The notes beneath the pieces were generated by a model. That model made no database searches, was not told the origin of the DNA, and worked only from the letters and a program-made list of their open reading frames with translations. From contig NIVC01000110.1 of assembly GCA_002269645.1 (NCBI GenBank), positions 1 through 64,000 of the forward strand: a DNA stretch of 64,000 nucleotides, read 5' to 3'. Numbering within the stretch: the stretch's first letter is position 1; each line of letters starts with the position of its first letter. This DNA is from Macrostomum lignano. Taxonomy: Eukaryota. The position numbers and the translations under genes were made by a program. Positions 3,901-57,844 of this stretch are shown in pieces.

Positions 3901-6900
3901 TGCTCAGGGGAGTCGGCGGAATGGGCAGCAATGCCTCTCGCCGGTTGTGTGACAATGTCGCTTAAAGTGCGCCAGGGTGCACACAGCCCCTGCTTCTCAA
4001 AAAAATGGTACCCACCGCCCCGTGTGTAGCTAAGGTTGGCTCAGGAGGGAAGTCGCTTAGAACCGATGAATACGCACTATGCCTCAGCTTAAAAGAGGTC
4101 AGAAAGAGTCAAAAAACGGAAAGTAAAAAGATGAGCAGTTCGATTATATTTAGCGGAGAGGAAGTTAATTCGCACGACCGTAAAACGTAGTGCCGGAGTG
4201 AGGCGGCAAAGAGCTCCTAGGAATAATTGAAATCGGGGGTACCAGGCCTAAATGCACATCGCAGTGGATAAAATTAAATATTTCTGTCTCCAGGCCTTTT
4301 AAAGCCTTTGCAGATCCACTGCATTAGCGGGAATTTCTTCTTATAATTTATTGTCACTTGGACTGAAACCAGAGCTCCTGACCCGAGAGCTTCGAGAGAT
4401 TATAACCTGGAGCACTTGATCCTGAAGTTGAAGGACATTGGGAGTGACTAGATTTTCGATTCTCTCGTACTTCTATTTTAAAAGACATTCACTTTGTTGA
4501 AGTTTTGTAACTTTCTCAGTTGATCCGCGCAGTACCGCTTGGACTTTTGTTGAATCAAAAAATCTGTTTTTGTTTATTGCGCGCTAAAAAATGCTCATGA
4601 GGCCCCAGCCCTCAAGGCACAGATTGTGTGCATGCCGGACACTGAGAAAGTCAGTGTCAGGCCGCCGTAAACTCTGTGAGTGTTCGTGCTCGGAGCTGCG
4701 TGGAACGGGCATGCTGCCTCTTCGCTGGCTTGTGGTTCGACCGTCGCCCTGACTAATTGCGACAGCGCCCACAGCGCTTTCCTGAGCTGTTTGGCCGGGT
4801 TCTTGGGCGAGCGGTTCTCTTCACGCTCGTAACTTCCAACTTGAAAAAAACTACTTTAGACTAGAAGATTTCGATCCAACCTAAATCATTGACGATTCAT
4901 TCACTATCGAATACCCCGAGTAGTCTTTATTCAGGATTTATCGGGAATCGTCGAAAACACCTGACAGACAAGCCAACAGCGCCGCTGCACTTGAACGCTA
5001 CTGTGCTTGGCTCGCACGCGATTCACCTGACTTGGCAGCCTCCGCGTCATCTGCGCCACCTGCCGTTGACCTCCTACGAAATTGCCACGAGCAGCGGCAC
5101 CTATCGTCACCTTGGAGACCGATTGATCTGGCATAGAGTTGAGCCTAGACGACTCAGCTACAGGGTGACAGGCCTGACAGCATACACTGAGTACTGCACC
5201 TGGCTGCGAGCCGCTAATCAGCTGGGCCCGGGACCGAGCACTCGCCGCTGCGAGCTACGAACTCTGGAGTCTCCACCGCAGCCAGCGGCCCTGTCCGCTA
5301 CCGTCACCAACGTCCAAGCCACCAGCGCCAAGCTTCGATTGAGCGTTGCACCGGCCGGGCATCCGTCTCTGGGCGGCAGACTGCGCGAGGTCCGGGTGCG
5401 ATGGCGTCGGACGCGCCACCTCGAATCGCACGCAGGCATGGAGGATCAGTGGACTGAGAAGACACTGGTTGCTAGGCAGTTTCGCAGCCGAACCACTGCC
5501 AGCCAGGACGTTGATCTGATGCTCGATGATCTCGAAGCTTTTAGCGGCTACAGTGTGCGATGCACCGTGCACAACTGGAGATACGCTGGGCCGGAGCTTC
5601 TACTGACTTTTGAAACACTGGAGGGCGGTGAGGAGTCTTATCTGTAGTTTTTCTCTGAACCTGGATGCAGTGCCTAAAGTGGGGTCACTTTCAGAAAATC
5701 AAAATTTGCATAATAAAAAATTCACATTGTTACTTTCACCGGAGAAAAGCTTCACAAGCTCGAAATTTTCGATTCAGCAGAAGTGCAGACTAGAATGCAA
5801 GCCTTTTTGAACTTGTGAAATTTCGATCTCACGACCCCATAAAGTGGTTTTCGGTGCAGAAAATTTAGAAAACATACGTCATGTGCAGTCTGGCGTGTTT
5901 TATGAAGACTTTGCAAAATGTAGTGATACAATCGATCTTGGTTTCTAACCAATAAAACATTCAATTCGATTAGAACGTTCTGGGTTTGGATGCATTCAGT
6001 AGTTCTTAGCATCTTGAATCGATGCGGGATCAATGTTTTAAAAGGATACTTAGATTTCAAACTTTTCATTTCAATGCAGAAGCCCCAGCGCCCACGCTGG
6101 CCCAGGACACGCACGCCCTGTTCGACACGAATGTCAGCGTCTCCTGGTCTCGTCTAGCCAGAGTGCCGGGCCACCTGACCGGCTACCAGCTCTCGTTGTC
6201 CGGCCCCTTCAACAGTCGCCGGTTGATCAACATTTCCAGCGAGTTCACTCGGTACTGCATCGCTGGACTAAAGCCGGCCACTCGATACTCAATCACCATA
6301 GCAGCTGTCACTCGCGTCCGAGGCCCTGGGCGCGCGTCTAACCGAGTAGACATCGCCACGGAGCCCAGCTGGCCAAGCCGGCCGCGAGATGTCCGGGTGG
6401 ATGAGAGAAGCTACGAAGCCGGCCTGTTGGTCTCCTGGGCCAGTCGCGGCTTCTTCGTCGGTTCGCCCGCGGTTGACCGCTCAGAAACACCGTATCCGCC
6501 CAACCTGCTGCTGTTCAGAGTTGAATGGCGGCTACGCAAAGTCTCCCAAGGTCTGCGGCTGGCAGGACGTCCAGGTGGTTCGAGGGAGACCCTCGTGCTG
6601 AGTCAGCTGGGCCAATGCCGGGTCAATGCGGCGTGGAGGCCCAGGGCCCAGGTCGCGAATGCAACAGTCTACCCAAATGAATCAGCAGAGGCGAGGACTA
6701 AATACCTGAGCACGCGCATCTGTGTAGGTTTTTATGCTAGCCTAAGATGATCTATTTCAAATAGTATTTCCTTGATCCCCCTAGACTGATGTCACACGAG
6801 TCTTTTTGGTCAGTTTCACTGGATCCATTCGTCAGCTAATAAAAACAACTCTGACTTTGCACGGGCTCAATTTAATCTAGAGCATATCTAAATTTTCAAG

Positions 6901-16150: not shown

Positions 16151-17066
16151 CGGCAATTAACCACTTAAGCTCCGCCTGAAATCCAAAGCACGCTGAAAAA
16201 ACCATGGATGAATGAATAGAATGGATTGCTATTCTGGCTCTGGCTATTTTCGTTTTTGACTCTTTTGCATCCGGTTCCCCCCGTGCCTTTTCATTGGTTG
16301 ATGATTGCCATAGACAATTTTCGGCCTTCGCCCCTTTCTTTCGATGCACAAGCGCTTTCGCTCGTGTTTTGAAATAAAGGGGGAAGACCTACGAGCGCTC
16401 GATATTCTCTGCAAGTAACTGACATTCTCAGTTCTTTGCGCCTGTGCATCGAAAGAAAGGGGCGAAGGCCGAAAACTGTCCATGGCAATCATCAACCAAC
16501 GAAAAGGCACGGGGGGGAACCGGATGCAAAAGAGTCAAAAACGAAAATAGCCAGAGCCAGAATAGCAATCCATTCTATTAGTGAAGGGGAGGCAAAGACA
16601 AGACAAACCAAGTGTGGCGATGGCGAGGCAGCGAAAAGCCAGAGGATGCAACCCTCAGACGATCGTATTTATTTCATGACTTGTTAAAACGAATTAAACT
16701 GATTAAAAATTATAATTAGCGAGGAAAAAAAATTCAACCGCGAGCAACCCCGCGCAGCCACAAAGGTGGCGGCCTAAATAGGCACGCGCACGCACCAACG
16801 CACCCACCACCCCACCAGACAGCCAGCACCCAAACAGCACTAACAGCGGTTAGCCCTCGCGGGCTCGCGCAAACCGATGCATTAGTGAAGGGGAGGCAAA
16901 GACAAGACAAACCGAGTGTGGCGATGGCGAGGCAGCGAAAAGCCAGAGGATGCAACCCCAAGGCCAAACAAACAAATGAATGAACGAAGGAGAGAATTTA
17001 CGAAACGGCGGAAATAAGGCTGGGGATAAGAACGGAAATAAAACTTTAAACACAAGCAAAAGTTAC

Positions 17067-18110
17067 TCAAAGGCAACTCTCGTTAAAAGCACCAGCAAAA
17101 CGCGAACCAGCCCGCACAGAATCAGCAGATGGAAGGTAGGCAGTCACAGCATCACTTCGCCAGTCACCGATGCACTTCACCTCCTGAACAGATAGTCCGA
17201 GACGGTAGGCCCAGGTGGCACCACCTCTGCGCAGGCTGTGCGCTGAGAAAGAACGAGCGTCCTGCTCAGCAGTTGCTAGGCAGCGCTTGAGGAACCTGTC
17301 GAATCTTGAGGCAGACAGGACAACAGAGGATCCGCTCGCCAACTGGTAGGAGAACACAGGCTGCCTGCAGCCAAGCTTGCTGACACGGAGGTGACCCTCT
17401 AGCGCAGCCACTGGGCAAAGCGGATGTCCTTCTTTTAGCCTTGGAAGCAACACCCGGTGCAGCTTCGCGCCGAACTGATTCGTCTTGCCATAACTGACAG
17501 AGAGCACAACCCCCTTCGGGTGGCGTTGAAAGGCTGAGACGGAAATCGGTGAAGCGGACTGCTGACTGGGCAGGAGACTGGAGCGCCGAAACATCCCCCA
17601 CCAAGCAATAAGCGTCACAAGCCAGCAGACTCTGTCAAGCGAACTGCTCGAGTTAAGCCGGTTTTTCACAGACAGCAGCATCGCAGGCGAGATCGGCAGC
17701 TTCCGTCTTGGTCGCTGGCCCATCCTCCGTTTAGCGCCGCGAACGAGCAGTGAGACCAGGTGGTGTTTTGTTAGGTCCTCAGCACCACAGGCTTTGAACC
17801 AGCTGGACAGTGCACTGACATGGACACGCAGACTGTTGAACGATCTCAGGCGGCATTCGACCAGGTGAGCCAGGTAGTTGAGTAGCACCGACCGGTCGGA
17901 TCGAGCCGGGTTGGTCCCGTTCTCGTTGCAGAAGCTGTGCCAGGACCGGACGGCCGATGAGATCGCCCTGCGTGACTGCGGTGCGTATGCTGCGGCGAGG
18001 AGGCTGGAGGCGGTGGCGCCGAGGGTCGGCGTTGCAGGGAGGCGGCCTGTGAAAATAAAAAACGGGAGGCAAAAACAGAAAACGCGTGATCCGAAAACTC
18101 CACAGGGCAA
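17067..18110 (-). CDS. Tyrosine recombinase of the YR retrotransposon
   Basis: Catalytic residues visible: GMFRR (R), YGKT (K), HSLRRGGA (HxxR), GDW, TAYL (Y). The ORF overlaps the 3' end of pol. The true start is uncertain and may be spliced. Confidence 0.95.
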   Translation of the reverse strand: MPCGVFGSRVFCFCLPFFIFTGRLPATPTLGATASSLLAAAYAPQSRRAISSAVRSWHSFCNENGTNPARSDRSVLLNYLAHLVECRLRSFNSLRVHVSALSSWFKACGAEDLTKHHLVSLLVRGAKRRMGQRPRRKLPISPAMLLSVKNRLNSSSSLDRVCWLVTLIAWWGMFRRSSLLPSQQSASPISVSAFQRHPKGVVLSVSYGKTNQFGAKLHRVLLPRLKEGHPLCPVAALEGHLRVSKLGCRQPVFSYQLASGSSVVLSASRFDRFLKRCLATAEQDARSFSAHSLRRGGATWAYRLGLSVQEVKCIGDWRSDAVTAYLPSADSVRAGSRFAGAFNESCL

Positions 18111-19759
18111 ACTGGTACAGACCCGTAAACACGGAAAATAAAATTAAGCAACTCATGACGCGAGTGCAGGCGGGACCCTGCATCAGCAAACAGCTGATAA
18201 GCACCAGGAACGTGAAAGACCTCAAATTCAACGTCAAAACGCAGACAGAGCAACGCCACAGACTGCAGCAACCACATCAGACGCGAGTCCTTGGAGACAC
18301 CTCGCCTTAGAATCCAACACGCCGTCTCATTGTCGCAGTACACAGCAAGCCGACAACCAGCCAAGGATTGGCCCCATCTCAAAACAGCCAGCAATATAAC
18401 CACAGCCTCCTTGTAATTGATGCAGTAATTCTGAAAAACACCATTTGCGTCGATCTGCCAGTCAATAAAGCACCAATCACGAATCCCATCACCGTCACGG
18501 AGCACCGCCGCGGCGCCTGAAGACGACGAGTCAGTCTCTATGGCAACACAAGCCCTCGGCGAAGTCCACAGGCCAACACCGATGCGATGCTGCAAAGCCA
18601 ACCGCCACCAGGAGAGGTGGTGCACCACGGAGGGACTAACAAGAACCCTGTCATGAGGTCGATGCAGCTTGTTAACAATGTCGATAAGAGGTCGGAGGAA
18701 AACTCTCCCGTGCCGAACAACTTGCGACGCCCAGTTTAACTTGCCGATCAACTTCTGCAAATACGACTTTGACAGCCTTTTCTTCGAAGAGCAGAGGGAT
18801 AAAACATGCAACAAGTCTTGGACTTTTTCGGCAGGAAGAGACATCTGGCCTGCCACGCTATCAAATAAAATGCCCAGAAAGGTCATCCGCGTTGTCGGCG
18901 GAACACACTTGCTACGGTTAACGGTGAAGCCTAGCCGCTCGAGCAGATCGATGAGATGGTTGTAGAACTTCCAGCAGGACTCCAGATCTCCACAAAAGGC
19001 GAAGTCATCCATGTAGGCCTCCATAGCGTAGAAACCATGCTTCAACATCATAAAACGCACAGCTTGGCTCAGCTCGTAAAAGCAGAAGACGGAAGCCGAA
19101 GCACCAAACGGGAGCCGCGTGTCGTACAGGTACACTGGCTGGCCCTCGCCTTGGAGCTGAATCTTCATGCCTGTGACCCGGTGGTCATCAGGGTGCACAC
19201 CACATGAACGATATGCTTGCGACAGATCCACTTTGCACATGTACGCGCCGCTGTACAGCTTCGAGGCAAAGTTGCTGGCCGAAGTAAAACGCAACTTCCG
19301 TTTCGACTCAAAGAAATCATTCACAGAGGCGCCAGTTGGCAGGCTGCAGTCGTGAATAAGGCGGATGGAAGACGAATCCGCCTTAGGGATCGCACCAAGT
19401 GCACTAACGATGAGCGGCCGGTTGCCTGCCTGGCAGCGCCTGTAGCGGTCCTGCTTGAGCTCCTGGCGCACCTGGGCCTCAACAGCTTGCTGGTGAATGG
19501 TAGCTGATCTGTGATTTGCCATCTCAGTGTGGTTCTTACAATCCATCACTTTATTAGTAATTCGAAAGCCATTCTTCACACCATCGAGCACGAACCTGAC
19601 ACGGTCCTCCGGCATCTCGGTCCCAGCCAGCTCTTCCCGCCAAACCGCAAACACAAGGTCGCTCGACAACTCAGTTGAACTCGGGTCACATAGGGGGAGC
19701 TCCCCCGTGGGGGCACAGGAGGGCGACCCGACGGCAGACATTGAGTCCTGTGCCCCCAC
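17846..19759 (-). CDS. Reverse transcriptase-RNase H (pol) of the YR retrotransposon
   Basis: RLIHDCS, KVDLSQAY, LPFG, YMDDF, FLG; RNase H motifs TDSS, INYKE, YCDN, HVPG..AD. Confidence 0.97.
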   Translation of the reverse strand: MGAQDSMSAVGSPSCAPTGELPLCDPSSTELSSDLVFAVWREELAGTEMPEDRVRFVLDGVKNGFRITNKVMDCKNHTEMANHRSATIHQQAVEAQVRQELKQDRYRRCQAGNRPLIVSALGAIPKADSSSIRLIHDCSLPTGASVNDFFESKRKLRFTSASNFASKLYSGAYMCKVDLSQAYRSCGVHPDDHRVTGMKIQLQGEGQPVYLYDTRLPFGASASVFCFYELSQAVRFMMLKHGFYAMEAYMDDFAFCGDLESCWKFYNHLIDLLERLGFTVNRSKCVPPTTRMTFLGILFDSVAGQMSLPAEKVQDLLHVLSLCSSKKRLSKSYLQKLIGKLNWASQVVRHGRVFLRPLIDIVNKLHRPHDRVLVSPSVVHHLSWWRLALQHRIGVGLWTSPRACVAIETDSSSSGAAAVLRDGDGIRDWCFIDWQIDANGVFQNYCINYKEAVVILLAVLRWGQSLAGCRLAVYCDNETACWILRRGVSKDSRLMWLLQSVALLCLRFDVEFEVFHVPGAYQLFADAGSRLHSRHELLNFIFRVYGSVPVCPVEFSDHAFSVFASRFLFSQAASLQRRPSAPPPPASSPQHTHRSHAGRSHRPSGPGTASATRTGPTRLDPTGRCYSTTWLTWSNAA

Positions 19760-19767
19760 CTCGCACG

Positions 19768-20859
19768 CTAGTTTTTTGAAAATTGGCCCGGGTCCCCATC
19801 AGCGTGGGCTCGGGCTTCAGAGTGCGGCTGTGAGCACCTGCGGCACTGATGGGCGAAGCGGCAGTGAGTTCTGTTGCAGCCGCTAAGACTGTTGAAGTCG
19901 AAACAGACAGGTGGCTGCGTTCGCTTTTTAGGCGCTGTTGCGCTTATCATTTTTGTTGGTGCCATCAAGTGTGTTGCCACCAGACCCAGGTCTGCGCTAA
20001 CAGCGCTCCACCGCGTTCCATCATGCTGGAGAAGCCGACATTCGTCATCATATCTCATGACTTTAGTGCGATCGAAGCCTAAATCTAGCAGGTCACCAAT
20101 TCTAGCGTTATGTCGGAGATGATCGATCAACTCGGATGAATCGATTCTGCCATCAACAATGCGCAGCAGTTTGCCATCACGCAGCATTTGCACCAGTAAG
20201 TTACAGCTACCGGAGATGAAATCGCCAAACGACAGTGACTCGGGACTGACGTGTCTCAACCTCTCTGGCTTTGCCGCTCCCACAACAGACTGGCTTCCTT
20301 GTCTCCGCTTACGCTCACTGATAAAATCAACGACTCTGTACACCGCCGGCGCCTGAGCATGCGAAGTTGCAGCCCCAGCCTGCCCGAGTATACACTCGCC
20401 AACCAAATCATGCCACTCACCGGGAGTCTGATCACGTTCTCTCGCAGCCGCCGTGCCACTGTGACGCGCTTCAGCGAGCTCGGCTTCGAGCTGAGCCTCT
20501 CTTTTTTTCAGGTCCAGCAGCCGAATGCGCAGTTCAGTCTCTCGCAGCTGATCCTCGAGACCGCCTCCCGTCGCCGCCCGACCCTCGGCCGAGGCGCCCA
20601 CCGCCGGTAGCATCTCGTCCTCAGGTGGAGCCAGACTTAGCTCGGGTGCGCCCGCATTCGTCGGTGATGTCTTGTCATCTTGAGCACGACGAGATGAGCC
20701 TCTGTCCTGCTCCAACGCCTGCCGCTCAAGCTCCTTGGCAATGCTGAGTTTTAGACGACTTGTTAGCTCTTGCTTATTGCCATTAGTAGGCAGGCCGCGC
20801 TCACTAAGGGCTTCTCGTAGCGCTTTGTTAGTTGCGGGCAGTACAAGGCTATCTGCCAT
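19768..20859 (-). CDS. Gag-like ORF1 with an N-terminal SAP motif and a C-terminal Cys/His finger
   Basis: LREALSERGLPTNGNKQELTSRL (SAP consensus); coiled coil; C-terminal CFDFNSLSGCNRTHCRFAHQCRRCSQPH. Confidence 0.9.
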   Translation of the reverse strand: MADSLVLPATNKALREALSERGLPTNGNKQELTSRLKLSIAKELERQALEQDRGSSRRAQDDKTSPTNAGAPELSLAPPEDEMLPAVGASAEGRAATGGGLEDQLRETELRIRLLDLKKREAQLEAELAEARHSGTAAARERDQTPGEWHDLVGECILGQAGAATSHAQAPAVYRVVDFISERKRRQGSQSVVGAAKPERLRHVSPESLSFGDFISGSCNLLVQMLRDGKLLRIVDGRIDSSELIDHLRHNARIGDLLDLGFDRTKVMRYDDECRLLQHDGTRWSAVSADLGLVATHLMAPTKMISATAPKKRTQPPVCFDFNSLSGCNRTHCRFAHQCRRCSQPHSEARAHADGDPGQFSKN

Positions 20860-21469
20860 GATTCAGCAAAAAAATTCAACCGCGAGCTTTCGCTCGTGTT
20901 TTGAAATAAAGGGGGAAGACCTACGAGCGCTCGATATTCTCTGCAAGTAACTGACATTCTCAGTTCTTTGCGCCTGTGCATCGAAAGAAAGGGGCGAAGG
21001 CCGAAAATTGTCTATGGCAATCATCAACCAATGAAAAGGCACGGGGGGGGGAACCGGATGCAAAAGAGTCAAAAACGAAAATAGCCAGAGCCAGAATAGC
21101 AATCCATTCTACAATATTCATTCATCCATGGAAAAAACCCACTGGCTGCAGAGCGGCCATAGACAATTCTAACCCCAGATTCACTCACCCCGAGCCTACC
21201 CGATAGGACCACGTAGACAAAGTCGAAGACTCTGATAAAATCTGTGTTCTTGACTCTATGGTGGAGAGTAAAAAAGAGAAAGAAAGAAGTCTCTCCCGTG
21301 AAGCTAAACTGTCACACTCTGTTTTCTTTACTTTTTATCTGCTCTTGCATGGCTGAGCGTCGCCAACCTTTCGACGACTCTTTTTCTCTTCACATCTGGC
21401 CAAATTGGGACCGGTGTAATCATCAATTTTTAAATACTGGCAAATATTTTTACCCATTTAGCCTAAGCG

Positions 21470-35247: not shown

Positions 35248-37452
35248 ATGACTAAGGGCACGATTCGCCTGCCGGACCCCATGTTCTTCCGGCAGAAGCC
35301 CCACAGCGGCCGAAAGTTCAGCAAAGCGGAGAAAAAGTCGCAAAACTTTTACCACATGGTGCCGAGATTCTTCGATCTGTACCATCCGACCACATCGTGG
35401 CTGGTGAACGCCATCAGGACTGAGAACGAGAAGGAGCTGAACCGCGTGCTCATGGACAAAGAATCAAAAGGCCTGCTCAAGTTCGAGCCGGACCCGCGAG
35501 CTTTGCAAGCCAAGAAGACTGTAATTGGCGGCAAGAAAGAATTTATCATCACCAAGGCGAAGTACTTCCAGGTGATTGACAGGCCGGAATTCTACTCTCT
35601 GGATCGATCTTCGCTGTTTAACCGGCACGCTGTCATGTACCTGACGCCTCTAGGCCTGGCTATTTACCTGCGAAAGCCCAAAGCGGCAACCATGCTGGTG
35701 CGATGCATCGACCGCGACACCAACAAGAAGCACATTATGGCACGACAGCCGCAGTTCATCACCTTCATCAACGAGCGATTCGGCGACCTGATGTGCCTGT
35801 ACGACCACAATCTGGCTATGCTGAATGAGACCTACGACATTCTTCAGGCCATGCTGCAGCACGAAAACTGGTTCCCAATGGAGCCATACGCCCTCGTCTA
35901 CCGGAAGCGCTTCGTTGAGACCTACCTGAACTTTGACGACTTTCTTGACTACGCGTTCTACGTGATGTTCACGAAGCGCAGCTCGATAGACATTCCCAGC
36001 CTGTGCTCCGCTGTGCTCAAATGCCCGACTGAGCATTTTCGCTTCAACTACATGAGCGAGCCGAGCCGAGCAAATCCCATGACTTTGCTTCGGGACGCTG
36101 AGCGCATCATCAACAATTGCAAAACCTATCCGCGACGGCTGCTACGATGCGCCTTCTACGCAGACAAGAAGCTGAAATCGACGGCTAATTTGGTTCGAGC
36201 GGCCAGTCAGTTTATCAACATGGGCATCTTTAAACTCGTGGGCGATCCCGCTATGCCATTCGTGCCCCGCCCCGGCCGGCGCAAGCGTCTCGAGACCATC
36301 CCAGTCTACAGGGAACGAAGCCGCGGAATCAACATTGAATGGCCGCAGGCTCTCTTTGAGTTCGATGCAGACTGCTGCATCGCTCTCATGGTTGGCCTCC
36401 TGGCGAAGTGCTACCGCCTTGCCAAGATGCCAACCTTCGCCGTGATCATCAAGACGATCGTCAAAACTCTGGCTGATGCCGGCTGGCTGAATTACTTCGA
36501 CATCATCAGCGATCTGGAGTTCAAAGACTACTTCATGGGACTAGATGACGCTGAAAAGGTTCGCTTCCAACCTGAGGTGTTTTCGTTCGTACGAGAATGC
36601 GCTCGGATCACCGTCATCGACCAGCGGCACGAGTTAGCTCGCTTCTTCACCGAGGAGCGCCTGGACCGCGAGCTGCACGCTCTGAACGATGTGCAGGACC
36701 CGGCCGTGCTAACCCGGATGCTGATGTGCAACGACGAGAACATTACTAACTACGTGATATTGGACAAGGGCGAGGAGCTCAAAGCCGCAGGCACAATCAT
36801 CGGTGGCAAACGAACTCGCGGCGTTGGACGCGACGACCCCAAGAACAAATACTACATGGACCGGCTGGAGTTCCCCAGAGAATCTACCAAGACCGTCATG
36901 ACCAACACCGCCAACACTGAGGAGTCCAGCGGCACCGGTGCCGGCTCCTCTTCCGACTCTGACTCGGACTTTTTCGTTCACAAAATGGCTAAGGAAGCTG
37001 AAGCTTTTCAGAATCTCAGCAACAAGGGCGACCACAGTGCTGCCACGGACACGGCCAGCAACAGCAGCTGCAGCAGTGACGATTTGCACAGGCAGAACCT
37101 GAGCGAGTACCTCCTGACCGCCGAGGTGGTGCCTGAGCAGCCCATTTCGACCACTCCGTCACCGGAGCAGCTGCCTCGGCTTCTGCCGCCGCTGCCGCAG
37201 CCGGCACTGGCGGGCCAGCGGTCAGTGAAGAGGAGCACCCGCAGTGCCAGAGTTCGAATCGCCAATGCGGGCAGCAACCCAGCGGGTGGCAGCCAAATCC
37301 CCGTGCTCATCCGTCGGACGGGTCCGCGACCGCCTCGACTGTTGGAGACCAAAGAGCCCACGGTTGACGAACTGGGCAGCGGCAGCAAAACTTTGGACGA
37401 GAAGCCGGGCAAGCATCAGAGGCGTGAAAGAAAACCATCTGTCAGGCAGTGA
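35248..37452 (+). CDS. Intronless 734-aa protein of unknown function (one ankyrin-like motif, disordered C-terminus)
   Basis: Long GC-rich ORF with coding-like composition; TPLGLAIYLRKPKAATMLV resembles an ankyrin helix pair; Ser/Pro/Arg-rich tail. Confidence 0.88.
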   Translation: MTKGTIRLPDPMFFRQKPHSGRKFSKAEKKSQNFYHMVPRFFDLYHPTTSWLVNAIRTENEKELNRVLMDKESKGLLKFEPDPRALQAKKTVIGGKKEFIITKAKYFQVIDRPEFYSLDRSSLFNRHAVMYLTPLGLAIYLRKPKAATMLVRCIDRDTNKKHIMARQPQFITFINERFGDLMCLYDHNLAMLNETYDILQAMLQHENWFPMEPYALVYRKRFVETYLNFDDFLDYAFYVMFTKRSSIDIPSLCSAVLKCPTEHFRFNYMSEPSRANPMTLLRDAERIINNCKTYPRRLLRCAFYADKKLKSTANLVRAASQFINMGIFKLVGDPAMPFVPRPGRRKRLETIPVYRERSRGINIEWPQALFEFDADCCIALMVGLLAKCYRLAKMPTFAVIIKTIVKTLADAGWLNYFDIISDLEFKDYFMGLDDAEKVRFQPEVFSFVRECARITVIDQRHELARFFTEERLDRELHALNDVQDPAVLTRMLMCNDENITNYVILDKGEELKAAGTIIGGKRTRGVGRDDPKNKYYMDRLEFPRESTKTVMTNTANTEESSGTGAGSSSDSDSDFFVHKMAKEAEAFQNLSNKGDHSAATDTASNSSCSSDDLHRQNLSEYLLTAEVVPEQPISTTPSPEQLPRLLPPLPQPALAGQRSVKRSTRSARVRIANAGSNPAGGSQIPVLIRRTGPRPPRLLETKEPTVDELGSGSKTLDEKPGKHQRRERKPSVRQ

Positions 37453-42588: not shown

Positions 42589-43060
42589 CTTTAGCATTTT
42601 AGCAAGGCAGCAACAGCCGACAACTGGGATAGGGAATCAGATGATCTGATGGATGCTGTGCGATGCACTAGGACGGCATACCGGAAAACAGCTATATAAT
42701 TGACCATGCGTCTGCTTTATGCACATAGTCCCTGCCCCCACCAGTTGCAAGTTTTTAGTTGGTAGCTTTTTAGGCTATTTCTGAACTTTTTAAGCTCCTT
42801 TAAAGCAAATCCAAATTCAGGTTTAGCTGAACTCAAATTTAAATCTGGCGTCTGTGTGCACATCAGGTAATATTAGACTTTCTCTCTGGCGATTTAGACT
42901 CATGAGAGTCAGTCCTAAGGCACTCACGAGCGAATCGTATCATATGTATATACACTGCCTAATAATACAACAAATAAGCCACAAACGTAACGCCTTTATT
43001 TGTTTGAAATTGCCTACAGCAAACAAACCTGTGGCACTTTTTCAGATTGAATACCTGCTC

Positions 43061-44764
43061 ATGGCGAAAAAGTTAGCGGAGACAATCGCCTCCAGCTCGG
43101 CTCACGGCATCAGTCGAGCAGCTGCCTCGGAGAACAAACTGCTTCGAGTGATGTGGATTCTGCTATTCCTCATTTGCCTGGCCGTTTTTCTGAAAAGCGG
43201 CATCAACCTTGTGCTCAAACTGCAAAAGAGCGAGATGACAAAGAAATACCAATTGGATCAGGCAACTTTCGTGCTCCCAGATCTGTACTTTTGTCCCATC
43301 AACCCGTACTCGGGCAGCTATCCCTTCACACTGACAAAGGAAGAGGCTGATTTGGTAAACAGCCGCATCAAACAGCTGATTGACCGCTTCGGAGAACTGT
43401 ATGATGTTCCGAAAAGCATTTTATTTCATGCCTTCTTGTGGACGCCTCAAGTGCAGTTGTCGCTTCCATTTGATCTGCTGGCAAAGTATTTGCTGGTTCG
43501 AAAGGAGGAATCAGTTCAATTCGCGGCCATCACCGATGATTTTGTAGCGCATAATGTTGATGTGGAAGCGTTTTACAACTACGAGAATCTAGTTTGCTTT
43601 CGGCTGATTCTCAGTGACAAACTAAAAAAGATGATCATGAATCCAGGTAGCACGCTGAAGTTGCGACTGTCAACTGACCCTTACTTGGCTGAGCTCAACT
43701 TCACTGGGCATCCGATTCAGCCCATTGCTGACAGCAATGGAAATTCGGTTCCGTTTCTTGAGTGGCACCCATACCGCTATTATGAACAGTTGAGAACATC
43801 CGGCTTTACTATGCTGATTGTGCCACCAGGAGCTTATCCGTCGCTAAGGTTCGAGGAGAGCTTCCACATGTCTCCAGGCTTTGAGTACTCGGTTCAGCTC
43901 AAGATGACAGAAAGCACCTGCAGTGAGGAGCTGCACGATAAGTTCTGCCTGTTGGAAACTCCGCCAGTCGAGTTCATGAACTCGCTATCAGGCAAGCGGG
44001 AACGATTCAACTACAGCAATGCTGCCTGCTACTATAGAAATGTTAACGTACAGGTAGTTGACGAGATTGGATGTCAGCTGAGTCAGCGGCCGTCGCTTTG
44101 GGAATTTCGCGACTATCCGCACTGCAGCAACATGTCTGAGATGACAGCAGCTACTGTCAAAAGAATGAGAAAAGCTGGCTCTGGACGACGAATCGAGCTT
44201 GAGACTCTTACCCAAAAGTACTGCAAAACTAGAATCCCCTGCTCGTATCCGATTTACTCCACCAGTTACTCGTTTGGCAAGTGGCCAAGCGCCGGCAGTT
44301 CGATTTTAAGGTACTTCGCCGAATACTTCAACCGCACCTCTGTAAGCAAGGCTGAGGCGCCAGCTTTGGCTAGGGTGTCCGATATTGCAAAGCAGCTTCA
44401 AATGGGTGACCACTCAGCCCACCTGGAGGGCATCTTCCACTCCTACGTGTCCGAGTCGATGCTTAGTGTCCAAATTACTATCGACTCGCTTCTCTCGCCA
44501 CAAGTCATGCTAGCCTGGTCTTACACATTCGCTGACCTTCTGGCTGACACCGGAGGTTTGCTGGGTCTGTACATCGGCTGCAGCGTGCTCACCGTTTGCG
44601 AAATGTTCGAACTCATCTACATCTGCGTGTCCCTGCTGCTCAAGCGTAGGTCGGCCAAGAGAAGCAGCTCAAGGACCGGCGATCAAGAGACTGCAGGATG
44701 CGATGTCGGAGAAAAACAAGCGCTGGGTGGAGAAAATGCTGAGGAAATCGAACTTAGGAGCTGA
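43061..44764 (+). CDS. DEG/ENaC family sodium channel subunit (intronless CDS)
   Basis: N-terminal SSAHGI (HG motif), TM1 VMWILLFLICLAVF, Cys-rich thumb, TM2 DLLADTGGLLGLYIGCSVLTVCE (GxS filter). The ATG at 43061 follows an acceptor ttttcag at 43045. Confidence 0.95.
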   Translation: MAKKLAETIASSSAHGISRAAASENKLLRVMWILLFLICLAVFLKSGINLVLKLQKSEMTKKYQLDQATFVLPDLYFCPINPYSGSYPFTLTKEEADLVNSRIKQLIDRFGELYDVPKSILFHAFLWTPQVQLSLPFDLLAKYLLVRKEESVQFAAITDDFVAHNVDVEAFYNYENLVCFRLILSDKLKKMIMNPGSTLKLRLSTDPYLAELNFTGHPIQPIADSNGNSVPFLEWHPYRYYEQLRTSGFTMLIVPPGAYPSLRFEESFHMSPGFEYSVQLKMTESTCSEELHDKFCLLETPPVEFMNSLSGKRERFNYSNAACYYRNVNVQVVDEIGCQLSQRPSLWEFRDYPHCSNMSEMTAATVKRMRKAGSGRRIELETLTQKYCKTRIPCSYPIYSTSYSFGKWPSAGSSILRYFAEYFNRTSVSKAEAPALARVSDIAKQLQMGDHSAHLEGIFHSYVSESMLSVQITIDSLLSPQVMLAWSYTFADLLADTGGLLGLYIGCSVLTVCEMFELIYICVSLLLKRRSAKRSSSRTGDQETAGCDVGEKQALGGENAEEIELRS

Positions 44765-45469
44765 TGGGGATGGCGAATATCGACTACAGAACGACGAATG
44801 ACTCTCAAATATGATTGGTTTGCACTGGCTTCTTCTGAACAGCCTGACCATGTCAGGTTGGGCAATCTTGCTTATTCATATATAGACTACGAGCCGTATT
44901 TGTTGATCAAGTTGGAAGACAAAACTCGTCATAAGCTTTAATAACCATTACGATTATTGTGCATTGACGTCAAACTTTATATTAAATGTATTACAATACG
45001 TTGAGTGTAAGTCTACACTTAATTGAACTTTTATTTTACTGATTATGTCTAGCTTTAGTTACACGCTCCTAAACTATAATCATCCAGACCAGTTTCTGGC
45101 TTCTCCTCGTAAAAAGCGACCAAACATAATCTCTATTCTTTAATGTTGCAATTTTATATTGATATAAACTATTGACAGACTGTTGAATAGAACTGACTCT
45201 GTCTCCCTGGAACCATACCACTTTATGATTGATCCGGTGTTTTGGGTTAGAACGGGCAGAAACTAGCCATCAATTATGCTTGCACAGTGCTTATCTGAGC
45301 CTATCTAATACACTCTGGGACAGCTCTGAAACTGCAGGAAACGTAGAATCTGCTGACTTTTATTCAATTTGCCCCGATAGACAGGCACTGGATAGGAATT
45401 AAATGCAAAACTCTAGTGGCGATGGAAGCATCATATTTATGGCGCCATAGTAGAGTGGCGCTATAATAG

Positions 45470-47706
45470 GATTACAGTGGTGCTAGTAGGGTTGCAGTAG
45501 TGCTAGTAGGGTTACAGTGTACGAGTAGGGTTGCAGTAGTGCTAGTAGGGTTACAGTAGTGCTAGTAGGGTTGCAGTAGTGCTAGTAGGGTTGCAGTAGT
45601 GCTAGTAGGGTTGCAGTAGTGCTAGTAGGGTTGCAGTAGTGCTAGTAGGGTTGCAGTAGTGCTAGTAGGGTTGCAGTAGTGCTAGTAGGGTTACAGTAGT
45701 GCTAGTAGGGTTGCAGTAGTGCTAGTAGGGTTACAGTAGTGCTAGTAGGGTTGCAGTAGTGCTAGTAGGGTTACAGTAGTGCTAGTAGGGTTGCAGTAGT
45801 GCTAGTAGGGTTGCAGTAGTGCTAGTAGGGTTGCAGTGTGCTAGTAGGGTTGCAGTAGTGCTAGTAGGGTTGCAGTGTGCTAGTAGGGTTACAGTAGTGC
45901 TAGTAGGGTTGCAGTAGTGCTAGTAGGGTTACAGTAGTGCTAGTAGGGTTGCAGTAGTGCTAGTAGGGTTGCAGTAGTGCTAGTAGGGTTGCAGTGTGCT
46001 AGTAGGGTTGCAGTAGTGCTAGTAGGGTTGCAGTGTGCTAGTAGGGTTACAGTAGTGCTAGTAGGGTTACAGTAATGCTAGTAGGGTTGCAGTAGTGCTA
46101 GTAGGGTTACAGTAGTGCTAGTAGGGTTACAGTAGTGCTAGTAGGGTTGCAGTAGTGCTAGTAGGGTTACAGTAGTGCTAGTAGGGTTGCAGTAGTGCTA
46201 GTAGGGTTGCAGTGTGCTAGTAGGGTTACAGTAGTGCTAGTAGGGTTACAGTAGTGCTAGTAGGGTTACAGTAGTGCTAGTAGGGTTGCAGTAGTGCTAG
46301 TAGGGTTGCAGTAGTGCTAGTAGGGTTGCAGTAGTGCTAGTAGGGTTACAGTAGTGCTAGTAGGGTTACAGTGTACTAGTAGGGTTGCAGTGTGCTAGTA
46401 GGGTTGCAATAGTGCTAGTAGGGTTGCAGTGTGCTAGTAGGGTTGCAGTAGTGCTAGTAGGGTTACAGTGTACTAGTAGGGTTGCAGTGTGCTAGTAGGG
46501 TTGCAATAGTGCTAGTAGGGTTGCAGTGTGCTAGTAGGGTTGCAGTAGTGCTAGTAGGGTTACAGTGTACTAGTAGGGTTGCAGTAGTGCTAGTAGGGTT
46601 ACAGTGTACTAGTAGGGTTGCAGTAGTGCTAGTAGGGTTGCAATAGTGCTAGTAGGGTTGCAGTAGTGCTAGTAGGGTTGCAGTAGTGCTAGTAGGGTTA
46701 CAGTGTACTAGTAGGGTTGCAGTAGTGCTAGTAGGGTTGCAATAGTGCTAGTAGGGTTACAGTGTACTAGTAGGGTTACAGTGTACGAGTAGGGTTGCAG
46801 TAGTGCTAGTAGGGTTACAGTGTACGAGTAGGGTTGCAGTAGTGCTAGTAGGGTTGCAGTAGTGCTAGTAGGGTTACAGTGTACGAGTAGGGTTGCAGTA
46901 GTGCTAGTAGGGTTGCAGTGTGATAGTAGGGTTGCAGTGTGATAGTAGGGTTGCAGTAGTGCTAGTAGGGTTGCAGTGTGCTAGTAGGGTTACAGTAGTG
47001 CTAGTAGGGTTGCAGTAGTGCTAGTAGGGTTGCAGTAGTGCTAGTAGGGTTACAGTAGTGCTAGTAGGGTTACAGTAGTGCTAGTAGGGTTACAGTGTAC
47101 TAGTAGGGTTGCAGTAGTGCTAGTAGGGTTGCAATAGTGCTAGTAGGGTTACAGTGTACTAGTAGGGTTACAGTAGTGCTAGTAGGGTTACAGTAGTGCT
47201 AGTAGGGTTGCAGTAGTGCTAGTAGGGTTGCAGTAGTGCTAGTAGGGTTACAGTAGTGCTAGTAGGGTTACAGTAGTGCTAGTAGGGTTACAGTGTACTA
47301 GTAGGGTTACAGTGTACTAGTAGGGTTGCAGTAGTGCTAGTAGGGTTGCAATAGTGCTAGTAGGGTTACAGTGTACTAGTAGGGTTACAGTGTACGAGTA
47401 GGGTTGCAGTAGTGCTAGTAGGGTTACAGTGTACGAGTAGGGTTGCAGTAGTGCTAGTAGGGTTGCAGTAGTGCTAGTAGGGTTACAGTGTACGAGTAGG
47501 GTTGCAGTAGTGCTAGTAGGGTTGCAGTAGTGCTAGTAGGGTTACAGTAGTGCTAGTAGGGTTACAGTAGTGCTAGTAGGGTTACAGTAGTGCTAGTAGG
47601 GTTGCAGTAGTGCTAGTAGGGTTACAGTAGTGCTAGTAGGGTTGCAGTAGTGCTAGTAGGGTTGCAGTAGTGCTAGTAGGGTTACAGTAGTGCTAGTAGG
47701 GTTACA
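45470..47706. repeat. 20-bp satellite (GTAGTGCTAGTAGGGTTRCA)n with 19-bp variants
   Basis: Direct periodicity; core TAGGGTT. Confidence 0.98.
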
Positions 47707-48063
47707 GCCTGGTTCCCTGGCTGCAGCACTGAGCTGCGGAAAGGGAACTAGAGATAAGCTACACATTGAACTGTCAATTTTGGGCGTCTAGTTTTGCAAG
47801 GCTCAGAAATATGTTCATTAATCATAAAATTATTTGATTTTTTAATAATTAGAGAACATTCGCAATATAGAATTCGAACTTATGCTCAAAGATTCCTATG
47901 GCTGTCTATGGGAAATCTTGCAATGAGGCACCTTGCCGTATCTGCTTTCAAAGCTTATAAAAGCGTGTTTCAAGACGCATTAAATGAATAAAATTAGTAA
48001 TGCTTTTAGTAGTAGCTACAGTACCTCTAAGCTGCATTAGTGTTAACTATAAACACCGAAGTA

Positions 48064-57100: not shown

Positions 57101-57844
57101 CGAGCCAAAGGCGGCCCAATCGGTGTTCCTGACGTTCCGACTCCAAGTGACCTTAGGCTTTTGATTGGTCGGCCCAATGCAAAAGCGGATAAAGCGGTGG
57201 TCCGAGAGCGAGTCCTCGTCCCACACTCGCCAGCCCGTAACTGCGGAAAGCAGTCCGGGTGAGGCGATGGTGGTGTCGATGACTTCGGCCCACCGCCCAT
57301 TATTGAACGTTGGTGCGTTGCCCACGTTACAGAAATTGAGGTTAGTGCTGCTGACATAGGCCAGCAGCTCCTCGCCTCTGCTATTAATGTTTTTGCTGCC
57401 CCAATGCAGGTGGTGTGCGTTCACATCCCCTGCAATGAGCAGCTCGAACCGATGGGACGCAGCATAGTCAATAAGGTTGACTAGCGCGTCGCAGACAACT
57501 GGGGCATCGCCTGGGAAATAGGCAGATGCTACCAGCACAGGTTTATTGGGAATGAGGTTATTGATTTGAACAACACAGATGTCCCCAGACGAGAGATCCG
57601 GTCTCATCCATGCCTCAAAAGCTTTCGCAGCAAAGACCAGAGATCTTGGGCGAGGCTGAGAGCCCGCCATGCAAAAACAGTGGTAGCCAGATGGCACATT
57701 ATTTGGCTTACCTTTAGTCATCCAGGGCTCCTGTACGAAGACCAGGCCCGGAAGCTGTTGCTCTGCCGTGCGCATCAGGTTGACTGACGCCGCCACGCAG
57801 TGCTGGGTGTTGATCTGCAGACACCAGGTAGTCGCTGGCATCAT
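54142..57844 (-). pseudogene. LINE ORF2 (endonuclease-RT-RNase H) with one frameshift and one in-frame stop
   Basis: The EN frame shifts to the RT frame at about 56860 (GAC AGA GGC versus GAG GCC TAT). A single TAG at 55212-55210 lies between the in-frame RT and RNase H. Confidence 0.9.

What the first reader, a model, noticed from the sequence alone, without database searches (positions are those of the whole stretch)
19681..19777. Candidate -1 ribosomal frameshift element (A_AAA_AAC plus three-stem pseudoknot) at the gag/pol junction of a DIRS/Ngaro retrotransposon
Seen (minus strand): gag ends ...TCA AAA AAC TAG, so the heptamer A_AAA_AAC (19777-19771) is in the gag frame directly before the stop. 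Pol is in the -1 frame and is open only from 19798, because TGA sits at 19801. After an 11-nt spacer comes a perfect 14-bp stem, GTGGGGGCACAGGA (19759-19746) paired with TCCTGTGCCCCCAC (19720-19707). Loop sequence TCGGGTCG (19731-19724) can pair with TGACCCGA (19688-19681), and the connecting loop holds a further hairpin, GGGGGAGCTCCCCC. Established: AAAAAAC is the MMTV gag-pro slippery site, and H-type or three-stem pseudoknots stimulate -1 frameshifting. Inference: Pol is made as a Gag-Pol fusion. I am not aware of a defined frameshift signal for YR retrotransposons. Caveats: the spacer is longer than the usual 5-9 nt, and an in-frame ATG at 19741 offers an alternative start.
Basis: partly seen in the sequence, partly recalled or inferred. 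Interest (0 to 1): 0.85.

Follow-up and report, generated by a model that had tools for sequence, protein, structure and literature searches.

The report
Frameshift signal in a YR retrotransposon
An intact Ngaro-like (tyrosine-recombinase) retrotransposon has the classic slippery sequence A_AAA_AAC and a very stable RNA stem at its gag/pol junction, and because distant relatives carry the same slippery sequence there, its reverse transcriptase is very probably made as a Gag-Pol fusion by -1 ribosomal frameshifting, a retrovirus-style mechanism I could not find described for this class of element.

Summary
On the minus strand, gag (20859-19768) ends TCA AAA AAC TAG. The RT/RNase H ORF is in the -1 frame and is open only from 19798. 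A_AAA_AAC (19777-19771) is the only good shift site in that 31-nt overlap.

The perfect 14-bp stem that starts 11 nt downstream is the only such hairpin in the 64-kb window. The 90 nt after the heptamer are the most stable 90-nt stretch of the element.

The decisive evidence is comparative. In relatives with Pol in the -1 frame (32-59% Pol identity), an in-frame A_AAA_AAC, or more rarely A_AAA_AAU or G_GGA_AAC, almost always lies in the gag/pol overlap. Most of these relatives have no AUG from which Pol could start. Sister lineages instead have one in-frame UGA or UAG in a readthrough-type context.

The downstream structure is not conserved across the family. The 8-bp pseudoknot stem is not above chance on its own, although the closest frameshift-type relative has a stronger loop-to-downstream pairing at the same position.

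Verdict: -1 frameshifting is well supported and the stem is a plausible stimulator. The three-stem pseudoknot is unproven. This is a new member of a known kind.

The parts
20886..21131 (-). 5' terminal repeat region of the element, upstream of gag
   Evidence: 20886-21111 is a 98-100% identical direct copy of 16354-16577. 20970-21131 is the inverted copy of 16202-16355. The exact element end was not determined.
19768..20859 (-). gag ORF, 363 codons: N-terminal SAP domain, a coiled-coil-like stretch, and a C-terminal CCCH-type zinc-finger motif. It ends ...FSKN-TAG.
   Evidence: PF02037 SAP, E = 3.6e-07. It is homologous to the L001 gag at 43% identity and aligns with the L001-L003 gag proteins.
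19799..19801 (-). TGA in the pol (-1) frame. It sets the upstream limit of the 31-nt window in which a shift can occur.
19771..19777 (-). Slippery heptamer A_AAA_AAC in the gag frame
   Evidence: The same heptamer is conserved at the same junction in 13 other loci.
19768..19770 (-). gag stop codon UAG, directly 3' of the heptamer
   Evidence: L001, L015 and L039 have the same heptamer-then-stop arrangement.
19746..19759 (-). S1 5' arm, GUGGGGGCACAGGA, starting 11 nt after the heptamer
19707..19720 (-). S1 3' arm, UCCUGUGCCCCCAC
19724..19731 (-). Proposed S2 5' arm, UCGGGUCG, inside the S1 loop and 3 nt before the S1 3' arm
   Evidence: Complementarity was read. It is not significant alone. It falls in the same alignment columns as the L001 pairing.
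19693..19706 (-). Hairpin GGGGGAGCUCCCCC (proposed S3), directly after S1
   Evidence: Part of the MFE fold. Energy.
19681..19688 (-). Proposed S2 3' arm, UGACCCGA
19739..19741 (-). In-frame AUG of the pol frame, inside the S1 loop. This is the alternative start proposed in the rival explanation.
   Evidence: codon 12 after the heptamer.
17846..19798 (-). [quoted passage not shown]
   Evidence: 449 homologues were found, the best at 50% identity.
20415..20420 (-). Candidate 5' splice donor, G|GUGAGU, phase 1, at gag codon ~146
   Evidence: A consensus donor lies at the same gag alignment column in L001, L002 and L003.
18047..18080 (-). Candidate 3' splice acceptor: a pyrimidine tract followed by CAG. 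Exon 2 would start at 18046, where YR homology begins.
   Evidence: It is conserved in L001-L003 and is phase-compatible with the donor.
18056..18062 (-). U_UUU_UUA in the pol frame, inside the pol/YR overlap. A possible second shift site, but not conserved in relatives.
17067..18110 (-). Tyrosine recombinase ORF, in the -1 frame relative to pol. It has no AUG until about codon 130. The HxxR motif and the catalytic Tyr region are present.
   Evidence: (PF00589).
16202..16958 (-). 3' repeat region. It holds a direct copy of the 5' repeat (16354-16577), an inverted copy (16202-16355), and a 90-nt direct repeat pair (16565-16654 and 16869-16958).

Best explanation
The unspliced RNA of this Ngaro-like YR retrotransposon is translated into Gag. 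A minority of ribosomes slip back one nucleotide on A_AAA_AAC (19777-19771) just before the gag UAG. They then continue in the pol frame and make a Gag-RT/RNase H fusion with the junction peptide ...FSKN-LACEVGAQ....

The shift is probably stimulated by the very stable 14-bp stem S1, 11 nt downstream. S1 may be extended into a pseudoknot by pairing of its loop with 19688-19681, and the adjacent stop codon may also contribute.

Shown here: the sequence features, the frames, the family-wide conservation of the heptamer, and the lack of an AUG in most relatives. Inferred: that slippage actually occurs, its efficiency, and which RNA structure stimulates it.

My estimates for the separate steps:
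- -1 frameshifting at the heptamer: about 0.8.
- S1 acts as the stimulator: about 0.6.
- S2, or a three-stem pseudoknot, forms and matters: about 0.35.
For: 1. The heptamer is correctly framed and is the only efficient shift site in the 31-nt overlap.
2. In-frame A_AAA_AAC lies in the gag/pol overlap of WIN (the window copy), L001, L010, L012, L015, L025, L026, L036, L039, L044, L051, L054, L064 and L070. L019 has A_AAA_AAU, and L016 and L090 have G_GGA_AAC. Of 12 loci with a gag ORF of about 200 codons or more and an overlapping -1 pol, 11 have A_AAA_AAC in the overlap against about 0.08 expected. The same 14 loci contain only 3 other AAAAAAC in 52.6 kb.
3. The constraint is on the nucleotides. 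The codon before AAA-AAC encodes S, P, A, T or G in different loci, yet its third base is A in all 15.
4. These loci are only 32-59% identical in Pol. On a Pol tree they are interspersed with readthrough-type relatives.
5. After the heptamer, the first pol-frame Met is at codon 67-216 in 12 of 15 loci. That is beyond the conserved AWExEL...GF.I N-terminal region, so an AUG start is not available (spot checks).
6. Sister lineages have pol in frame behind a single stop: 24 UGA, 9 UAG and 0 UAA. C follows UGA in 20 of 24 cases, including UGA-CUAG. G follows UAG in 6 of 9. So a Gag-Pol fusion made by recoding is the family's strategy.
7. S1 is unique in the 64-kb window, and the downstream 90 nt are the most stable stretch of the element.
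8. The closest frameshift-type relative, L001, has the same heptamer-plus-stop arrangement. It also has an 18-bp interrupted stem 7 nt downstream and a loop-to-downstream duplex of -20.7 kcal/mol (0 of 400 control windows and 5 of 2000 shuffles do as well). Its S2 arms align with the window's S2 arms, with two double compensatory changes. The two readthrough-type members of the same clade, L002 and L003, have no such structure.
9. [quoted passage not shown]
Against: - The spacer is 11 nt, longer than the usual 5-9 nt.
- Shuffle z-scores are unimpressive.
- S2 is not above chance in this copy.
- About half of the frameshift-type relatives have no stable downstream structure. Structure is therefore not a family-wide requirement, or their stimulators are of another kind.
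- This copy and L001 do have a pol-frame AUG close by, at codon 12 and codon 3. In L001 it overlaps the stop as UGAUG.
- There is no close second copy for covariation.
- No expression data were available.
- The element has no protease, so the fate of a fusion protein is unknown.
Confidence: 0.8

Rival explanations
1. Frameshifting occurs at A_AAA_AAC, but only the S1 hairpin (possibly with the adjacent stop codon) stimulates it. The 8-bp loop-to-downstream complementarity (S2) and the three-stem architecture are fortuitous.
For: S2 is matched or beaten by 16% of other windows and 36% of shuffles. Apart from L001, no frameshift-type relative shows significant loop-to-downstream pairing. The MFE fold uses part of the S2 5' arm in a small local hairpin.
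Against: L001 has a highly significant equivalent pairing at the same position. In both sequences the S2 5' arm lies exactly 3 nt before the S1 3' arm, and there are compensatory differences between them.
Confidence: 0.45
2. Pol is translated separately, either by termination-reinitiation or by internal initiation at AUG 19741 (27 nt after the gag stop). The heptamer is incidental.
For: An in-frame AUG exists at codon 12 after the heptamer. In L001 an AUG overlaps the gag stop as UGAUG, an arrangement known from termination-reinitiation systems.
Against: Twelve of 15 frameshift-type relatives have no pol-frame AUG for 67-216 codons, which is past conserved Pol sequence. This model does not explain the conserved heptamer or the invariant A at the preceding wobble position. 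Reinitiation after a 363-codon ORF is normally inefficient in eukaryotes (general knowledge).
Confidence: 0.06
3. Pol is expressed from a spliced mRNA that joins an upstream exon to an acceptor near the start of pol.
For: The family does seem to use splicing for the recombinase: a conserved donor in gag and a conserved acceptor at the YR start.
Against: There is no pyrimidine-tract-plus-AG acceptor between the heptamer and the conserved start of Pol in this copy, and none is conserved in relatives. Splicing would not explain the in-frame heptamer or the in-frame single-stop relatives.
Confidence: 0.04
4. RNA polymerase slips on the A6 run and produces a minority of mRNAs with one A added or removed. 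Ribosomes do not shift.
For: The site contains six consecutive A residues.
Against: Relatives with G_GGA_AAC (L016, L090) have no A6 run. The conserved terminal C and the exact codon phasing are what tandem tRNA slippage requires, and polymerase slippage does not require them. A6 is short for RNA polymerase II slippage (general knowledge). Four independently assembled L001-family contigs all carry exactly A6.
Confidence: 0.03
5. The frame change is a decay mutation in a dead copy, and the heptamer and stem are coincidences.
For: Only one copy is present in the window. Nothing shows that it is transcribed.
Against: The gag, pol and YR ORFs are all intact and the terminal repeats are 94-100% identical. 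The heptamer recurs at the same junction in many divergent relatives.
Confidence: 0.03

Closest known systems
Retroviral gag-pro -1 frameshift sites that use A_AAA_AAC (MMTV, HTLV, BLV)
   Same: The slippery heptamer is identical. The position at the end of gag is the same. There is a GC-rich downstream structure, and the product is a C-terminally extended Gag fusion. The shiftiness of the heptamer is cited from PMC5009743. The named viral examples are from my own knowledge.
   Different: The host element is a tyrosine-recombinase retrotransposon with no protease and no DDE integrase. The spacer is 11 nt rather than about 7. The gag stop codon abuts the heptamer. No Rfam frameshift-element family matches the region.
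Recoding signals between gag and pol of LTR retrotransposons (the 2003 survey summarised in PMC5009743)
   Same: Retrotransposons with pol in the -1 frame carry classical heptamers in the gag/pol overlap. Related elements differ in which recoding mode they use.
   Different: As summarised in that review, the survey covers LTR retrotransposons. The review text held here (its first 300,000 characters) does not mention DIRS, Ngaro or tyrosine-recombinase elements.
Coronavirus three-stem frameshift pseudoknot (SARS-CoV type, U_UUA_AAC)
   Same: The proposed topology matches: a long S1, S2 formed between the S1 loop and downstream sequence, and a third hairpin between the S1 3' arm and the S2 3' arm (own knowledge for the coronavirus structure; for the window).
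   Different: There is no sequence or Rfam similarity. S2 is statistically unsupported here. The spacer is longer, and the S1 loop is large (25 nt).
Luteovirus and dianthovirus -1 frameshift sites (BYDV, RCNMV), where a stop codon directly follows the heptamer
   Same: The 0-frame stop codon lies immediately 3' of the slippery heptamer, as in the window, L001, L015 and L039. The viral examples are from my own knowledge.
   Different: Those are plant RNA viruses with different heptamers, and in BYDV the stimulator includes a long-distance interaction.
Gag-Pol made by stop-codon readthrough (the MuLV UAG-G type and the alphavirus UGA-C / UGA-CUAG type contexts)
   Same: Sister lineages of this element (L002, L003, L087 from Clytia hemisphaerica, and others) have pol in frame behind a single UGA-C or UAG-G stop. 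Readthrough contexts are described in PMC4132726 and PMC3159437, of which I saw only the titles and abstracts.
   Different: The window element itself uses the -1 arrangement, not readthrough.
Totivirus L-A Gag-Pol
   Same: A -1 frameshift produces a Gag-Pol fusion that is not cleaved by any element-encoded protease (own knowledge). This element also has no protease domain.
   Different: L-A is a dsRNA virus with an RdRp and is not a retroelement. The heptamer and the structure are different.

Membership tests
Canonical eukaryotic -1 programmed ribosomal frameshift cassette | An X_XXY_YYZ heptamer phased in the upstream (0) frame | tested here: met
   (UC)A AAA AAC at 19777-19771 in the gag frame.
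Canonical eukaryotic -1 programmed ribosomal frameshift cassette | The heptamer lies where both the 0 frame and the -1 frame are open, and the -1 ORF encodes the downstream product | tested here: met
   The overlap is 19798-19768. The -1 ORF encodes RT and RNase H.
Canonical eukaryotic -1 programmed ribosomal frameshift cassette | A stable stimulatory RNA structure about 5-9 nt downstream | tested here: inconclusive
   There is an exceptional 14-bp stem, but it starts 11 nt downstream. In L001 the stem starts 7 nt downstream.
Canonical eukaryotic -1 programmed ribosomal frameshift cassette | Conservation of the signal in relatives beyond what the coding sequence requires | tested here: met
   The heptamer is conserved in 14 loci plus variants, and the wobble A is invariant although the amino acid varies. 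The structure is conserved only in part of the family.
Canonical eukaryotic -1 programmed ribosomal frameshift cassette | A demonstrated trans-frame protein product | not testable with these tools
   This needs a reporter assay, ribosome profiling or mass spectrometry.
H-type or three-stem frameshift pseudoknot | The S1 loop pairs with downstream sequence (S2) more than chance allows | tested here: inconclusive
   Window copy: 8 bp, -12.9 kcal/mol, not significant. L001: significant, and in the same alignment columns.
H-type or three-stem frameshift pseudoknot | Covariation that supports each stem | tested here: inconclusive
   Only two informative sequences exist. S2 shows 2 double changes and 1 single change across 6 aligned pairs. 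The four L001-family contigs are identical.
Ngaro-type YR retrotransposon | Gene order gag, RT/RNase H, tyrosine recombinase | tested here: met
   Pfam finds SAP in gag, RVT_1 and RT_RNaseH in pol, and Phage_integrase in the third ORF. HxxR and the Tyr region are present in the translation.
Ngaro-type YR retrotransposon | No methyltransferase, protease or DDE integrase domain | tested here: met
   Pfam reports no such domain in any of the three ORFs at E <= 0.01. The definition is from PMC3783388 and PMC3266345.
Ngaro-type YR retrotransposon | Split direct repeats (A1 ... B1 A2 B2) | tested here: inconclusive
   The 5' repeat is copied directly at 16354-16577 and is also copied inverted at 16202-16355. 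A 90-nt direct pair lies upstream of A2. This does not fit the textbook layout.
Ngaro-type YR retrotransposon | The RT groups with reference Ngaro elements in a phylogeny | not tested
   No reference (Repbase) sequences were available. The relatives found are unannotated metagenome and genome hits.
DIRS1-like retrotransposon | A methyltransferase domain after RT/RNase H, and a YR ORF that precedes or overlaps pol | tested here: not met
   There is no MT domain, and YR follows pol. The definition is from PMC3266345.
DIRS1-like retrotransposon | Inverted terminal repeats plus an internal complementary region | tested here: inconclusive
   Inverted copies of about 155 nt exist at the two ends, but an ICR could not be defined from a single copy.

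The most novel reading that the evidence does not exclude
This clade of YR retrotransposons runs a complete retrovirus-like expression programme without a protease.

- The unspliced RNA gives Gag, and gives Gag-RT/RNase H by recoding. Lineages have switched repeatedly between -1 frameshifting at A_AAA_AAC and UGA/UAG readthrough.
- The recombinase has no AUG of its own. It is made from a spliced mRNA that joins a conserved phase-1 donor in gag (window 20420) to a conserved acceptor at 18047. The product is a SAP-domain/coiled-coil-YR fusion.
Probability: 0.4. Interest if true: 0.65.

Novelty: new member of a known kind. Interest (0 to 1): 0.5.

Why it matters
How YR retrotransposons (DIRS, Ngaro, PAT, VIPER) express Pol and the recombinase is poorly described. 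The papers I could search mention only overlapping or frameshifted ORFs and give no signal.

A defined recoding site has three uses:
- It gives annotators a rule for joining gag and pol in these elements. Gene callers currently start Pol at arbitrary internal AUGs, as.
- It gives the frameshifting field a set of natural A_AAA_AAC sites, some with very strong, some with moderate and some with no evident downstream structure.
- It offers a family in which -1 frameshifting and readthrough have replaced each other many times. That is a natural experiment on how the Gag:Gag-Pol ratio is set.

It also raises the question of what an unprocessed Gag-RT fusion does in an element that has no protease.

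Tried and rejected
- Second copy in the window for covariation: self-BLAST found only the element's own terminal repeats.
- Closer relatives: the best Pol hits are 50% identical. The gag search returned only the L001 family. Its four contigs, from four sequencing runs, are 100% identical across the junction and so carry no information.
- Other collections: the viral-contig and prokaryote-genome scans found nothing.
- Rfam: no frameshift-element or other family matches, only noise with E > 4.
- Dinucleotide-shuffle z-scores for the structure are weak. I judged this test uninformative for a GC-rich self-complementary segment. I used window-wide hairpin counts and within-element control windows instead.
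- Loop-to-downstream (S2) significance: not significant in the window, significant in L001.
- Family-wide conserved stimulator: rejected. Percentiles are bimodal, and several loci have C/A-rich unstructured sequence after the heptamer. My hairpin-finder's end constraint did not behave as intended, and the L090 heptamer index was wrong. I use only for the qualitative point.
- A second programmed frameshift at the pol/YR junction: U_UUU_UUA is present here, but no canonical heptamer is present in L001 or L003. Splicing fits better.
- A structure downstream of the stop in readthrough-type relatives: there is no general signal. L008 and L020 share a stem, but it overlaps the conserved AWExEL coding motif.
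- The 2003 survey paper on LTR-retrotransposon recoding could not be opened.


Full report
**What is in the sequence.** On the minus strand the window carries one intact retroelement.
- gag runs from 20859 to 19768 and has 363 codons. It has an N-terminal SAP domain and a CCCH-like motif near its C-terminus, and it ends TCA AAA AAC TAG.
- The next ORF is in the -1 frame. It is closed by TGA at 19801-19799, open from 19798 to 17846, and encodes RT and RNase H.
- A third ORF, 18110-17067, is again in the -1 frame relative to pol and encodes a tyrosine recombinase.
- No methyltransferase, protease or DDE integrase domain is found. By the definitions in PMC3783388 and PMC3266345 this is the Ngaro gene order and not the DIRS1 order.
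- The terminal repeats are unusual. The 5' repeat (20886-21111) recurs directly at 16354-16577 and inverted at 16202-16355. I therefore call the element Ngaro-like and do not assign it firmly.
- Neighbouring genes point to a Macrostomum-like flatworm host. They include an ASC/ENaC channel ORF whose best named homologues are from Macrostomum lignano at 40-43% identity, fn3 exons, and a LINE.

**Checking the observation.**
- A_AAA_AAC (19777-19771) is phased as X_XXY_YYZ in the gag frame. It is the only efficient shift site in the 31-nt overlap.
- The 14-bp stem S1 (19759-19746 with 19720-19707) is perfect and lies 11 nt downstream. It appears in the MFE fold and scores -29.4 kcal/mol, or -39.9 with the adjacent GGGGGAGCUCCCCC hairpin.
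- S1 is the only perfect hairpin of 14 bp or more in the 64-kb window, and shuffles gave none. The 90 nt after the heptamer fold more stably than any other 90-nt window of the element.
- Shuffle z-scores of the segment itself are weak, -1.3 to -1.5. I attribute this to the test: shuffles keep the balanced G/C content of a self-complementary segment.
- The proposed S2 (19731-19724 with 19688-19681) is complementary over 8 bp at -12.9 kcal/mol. It is not above chance, because 16% of other windows and 36% of shuffles pair with the loop as well.

**Comparative evidence for frameshifting.** There is no second copy in the window, and no relative closer than 50% Pol identity in the protein collection. 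I therefore compared gag/pol junctions in 3 close and 80 more distant loci, plus 4 loci from named or long assemblies.
- Where Pol is in the -1 frame behind a long gag ORF, an in-frame A_AAA_AAC lies in the overlap in WIN (the window copy), L001, L010, L015, L025, L026, L036, L039, L044, L051 and L054. The same is true in L012, L064 and L070, which have shorter gag ORFs.
- L019 has A_AAA_AAU. L016 and L090 have G_GGA_AAC.
- In WIN, L001, L015 and L039 the stop codon follows the heptamer directly.
- About 0.08 in-frame AAAAAAC would be expected in the 12 overlaps tested, and 11 were found. The 14 loci contain only 3 other AAAAAAC in 52.6 kb.
- The residue encoded before Lys-Asn varies (S, P, A, T, G), but the third base of its codon is A in 15 of 15 loci. 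Selection therefore acts on the nucleotides and not on the peptide.
- These loci share only 32-59% Pol identity and are scattered across a Pol tree.

**Evidence that the family makes a fusion protein.**
- In 12 of 15 frameshift-type loci, the first pol-frame Met after the heptamer is 67-216 codons downstream. That is beyond the conserved N-terminal Pol motif (AWExEL...F.L.G...GF.I), so independent AUG initiation would truncate conserved sequence (spot checks).
- The other relatives have Pol in frame behind a single stop: 24 UGA, 9 UAG and no UAA. C follows UGA in 20 of 24 cases, including UGA-CUAG in L002 and L020. G follows UAG in 6 of 9. These are classical readthrough contexts.
- In L002 and L003, conserved Pol residues lie upstream of the first AUG.
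- On the tree the two modes are interspersed. The window and L001 (frameshift) are sisters to L002 and L003 (readthrough).

**The stimulator.** Downstream structure is not a family-wide feature.
- WIN, L001, L026 and L036 are in the top 5% of their own elements for 90-nt downstream stability. Six others are average or below, with C/A-rich sequence after the heptamer.
- Within the window's own clade the pattern is telling. Both frameshift members have strong structure in a linker of almost equal length (37-38 codons) that shows no amino-acid similarity. The two readthrough members have none.
- L001 has an interrupted 18-bp stem 7 nt after the heptamer. Its 21-nt loop pairs with downstream sequence at -20.7 kcal/mol (0 of 400 control windows and 5 of 2000 shuffles do as well).
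- In both sequences the S2 5' arm ends exactly 3 nt before the S1 3' arm. In a plain MAFFT alignment, RNAalifold recovers S2 in the same columns, with two double compensatory changes and one single change.
- This raises my belief in a pseudoknot from low to moderate, about 0.35. Two sequences are not a covariation test, and the four L001-family contigs are identical.
- The 11-nt spacer remains atypical.

**Rival explanations.**
- Reinitiation or internal initiation at AUG 19741 is possible for this copy, and L001 even has UGAUG. It cannot explain the relatives that lack an AUG or the conserved heptamer.
- Splicing into pol finds no acceptor near the junction.
- Polymerase slippage on A6 does not fit the G_GGA_AAC relatives or the strict codon phasing.
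- A decayed copy is contradicted by three intact ORFs and near-identical repeats.

**Comparison with what is known, and novelty.** Mechanistically this is the retroviral and LTR-retrotransposon gag-pol solution. The heptamer is that of the MMTV, HTLV and BLV gag-pro sites (own knowledge), and the stop abuts the heptamer as in luteovirus sites (own knowledge). The proposed topology resembles the coronavirus three-stem pseudoknot, but Rfam shows no family match.
- Full-text searches for Ngaro, DIRS or tyrosine recombinase together with frameshifting, slippery or readthrough found no described recoding signal for YR retroelements.
- The class-specific papers speak only of overlapping or frameshifted ORFs.
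- The large 2016 recoding review does not mention these elements in the text held.
- The original Ngaro and DIRS descriptions are not in the library, so an earlier mention cannot be excluded.
- I rate the finding a new member of a known kind, of moderate interest.

**Side finding: how the recombinase may be expressed.** The YR ORF has no AUG for about 130 codons.
- Exactly where YR homology begins, WIN, L001, L002 and L003 all have a pyrimidine tract followed by CAG|G(C/U)CGCC.
- All four also have a consensus donor, G|GUGAG(U/C), at the same column of the gag alignment. It lies in an otherwise unconserved stretch, and the encoded residue even differs (G or C).
- The donor and acceptor are both phase 1 in all four loci. 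Splicing would therefore produce Gag(1-~146: SAP plus coiled coil)-YR.
- A pol-frame U_UUU_UUA (18062-18056) offers a second-frameshift alternative in this copy only.
- This fits a retrovirus-like division of labour between unspliced and spliced RNA. It needs RNA-seq to confirm.

Noticed in passing
window 20415-20420 (donor) and 18047-18080 (acceptor), minus strand; L001 413 and 2775; L002 820 and 3189; L003 460 and 2763: A candidate intron would express the recombinase. A consensus phase-1 5' splice donor lies at the same gag alignment column in four relatives. A pyrimidine tract plus CAG acceptor lies exactly where YR homology starts. Splicing would fuse the SAP/coiled-coil N-terminus of Gag to the AUG-less YR.
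   Followed up: partly
window 18056-18062, minus strand: U_UUU_UUA in the pol frame lies inside the pol/YR overlap, 9 nt before the candidate acceptor AG. It could be a second -1 shift site, but L001 and L003 have no canonical heptamer there.
   Followed up: partly
L002 1533, L003 1107, L020 1878, L008 2666, L087 2845 (Clytia hemisphaerica) and about 28 other loci: Many relatives have pol in frame behind one stop codon in a readthrough-type context: UGA-CUAG, UGA-CUC, UGA-CGN or UAG-G, and never UAA. On the Pol tree they are interspersed with frameshift-type relatives, which implies repeated switching of recoding mode.
   Followed up: partly
L001 1057-1061: The gag stop and a pol-frame AUG overlap as UGAUG, directly after the heptamer. 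This arrangement is typical of termination-reinitiation. It is not seen in other relatives.
   Followed up: partly
L012, L019, L051, L054, L064, L070, downstream of their heptamers: Frameshift-type relatives without stable structure have C-rich tracts shortly after A_AAA_AAC, for example CAGUAACCCCCGCG. These may only reflect a Pro/Thr-rich linker, or they could be a non-structural stimulator such as a protein-binding site.
   Followed up: no
window 16202-16958 and 20886-21131: The terminal repeat architecture mixes direct and inverted copies: a-b at the 5' end and a-b-a' at the 3' end, plus a 90-nt direct pair. It fits neither the textbook Ngaro split direct repeats nor the DIRS1 ITR/ICR layout. 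It could also be a head-to-head partial second copy.
   Followed up: partly
L008 2669-2760 and L020 1881-1972: The two relatives share a strong stem after the UAG/UGA-CUAG stop and rank in the top 0-5% of their loci for stability. The stem overlaps the conserved AWExEL coding motif, so it may reflect a coding constraint.
   Followed up: partly
window 54142-59481, minus strand: A non-LTR (LINE) retrotransposon: an ORF1-like 546-aa ORF, an APE endonuclease (56828-57844), RT (55210-56748) and RNase H (54142-55017), in a region of about 60% GC.
   Followed up: no
window 42854-44764 (+); 4889-6750 (+): An apparently intronless ASC/DEG-ENaC channel ORF of 636 aa, whose best named homologues are from Macrostomum lignano at 40-43% identity. 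There are also fibronectin type III exons. Both indicate a metazoan, flatworm-like host.
   Followed up: partly
window 45467-47707 and 48187-48867: Two large tandem arrays: about 114 copies of a 20-mer (TAGGGTTGCAGTAGTGCTAG), which explains the strong GC skew, and about 45 copies of a 15-mer.
   Followed up: no
window 35248-37452 (+): A 734-aa ATG-initiated ORF with no Pfam match.
   Followed up: no
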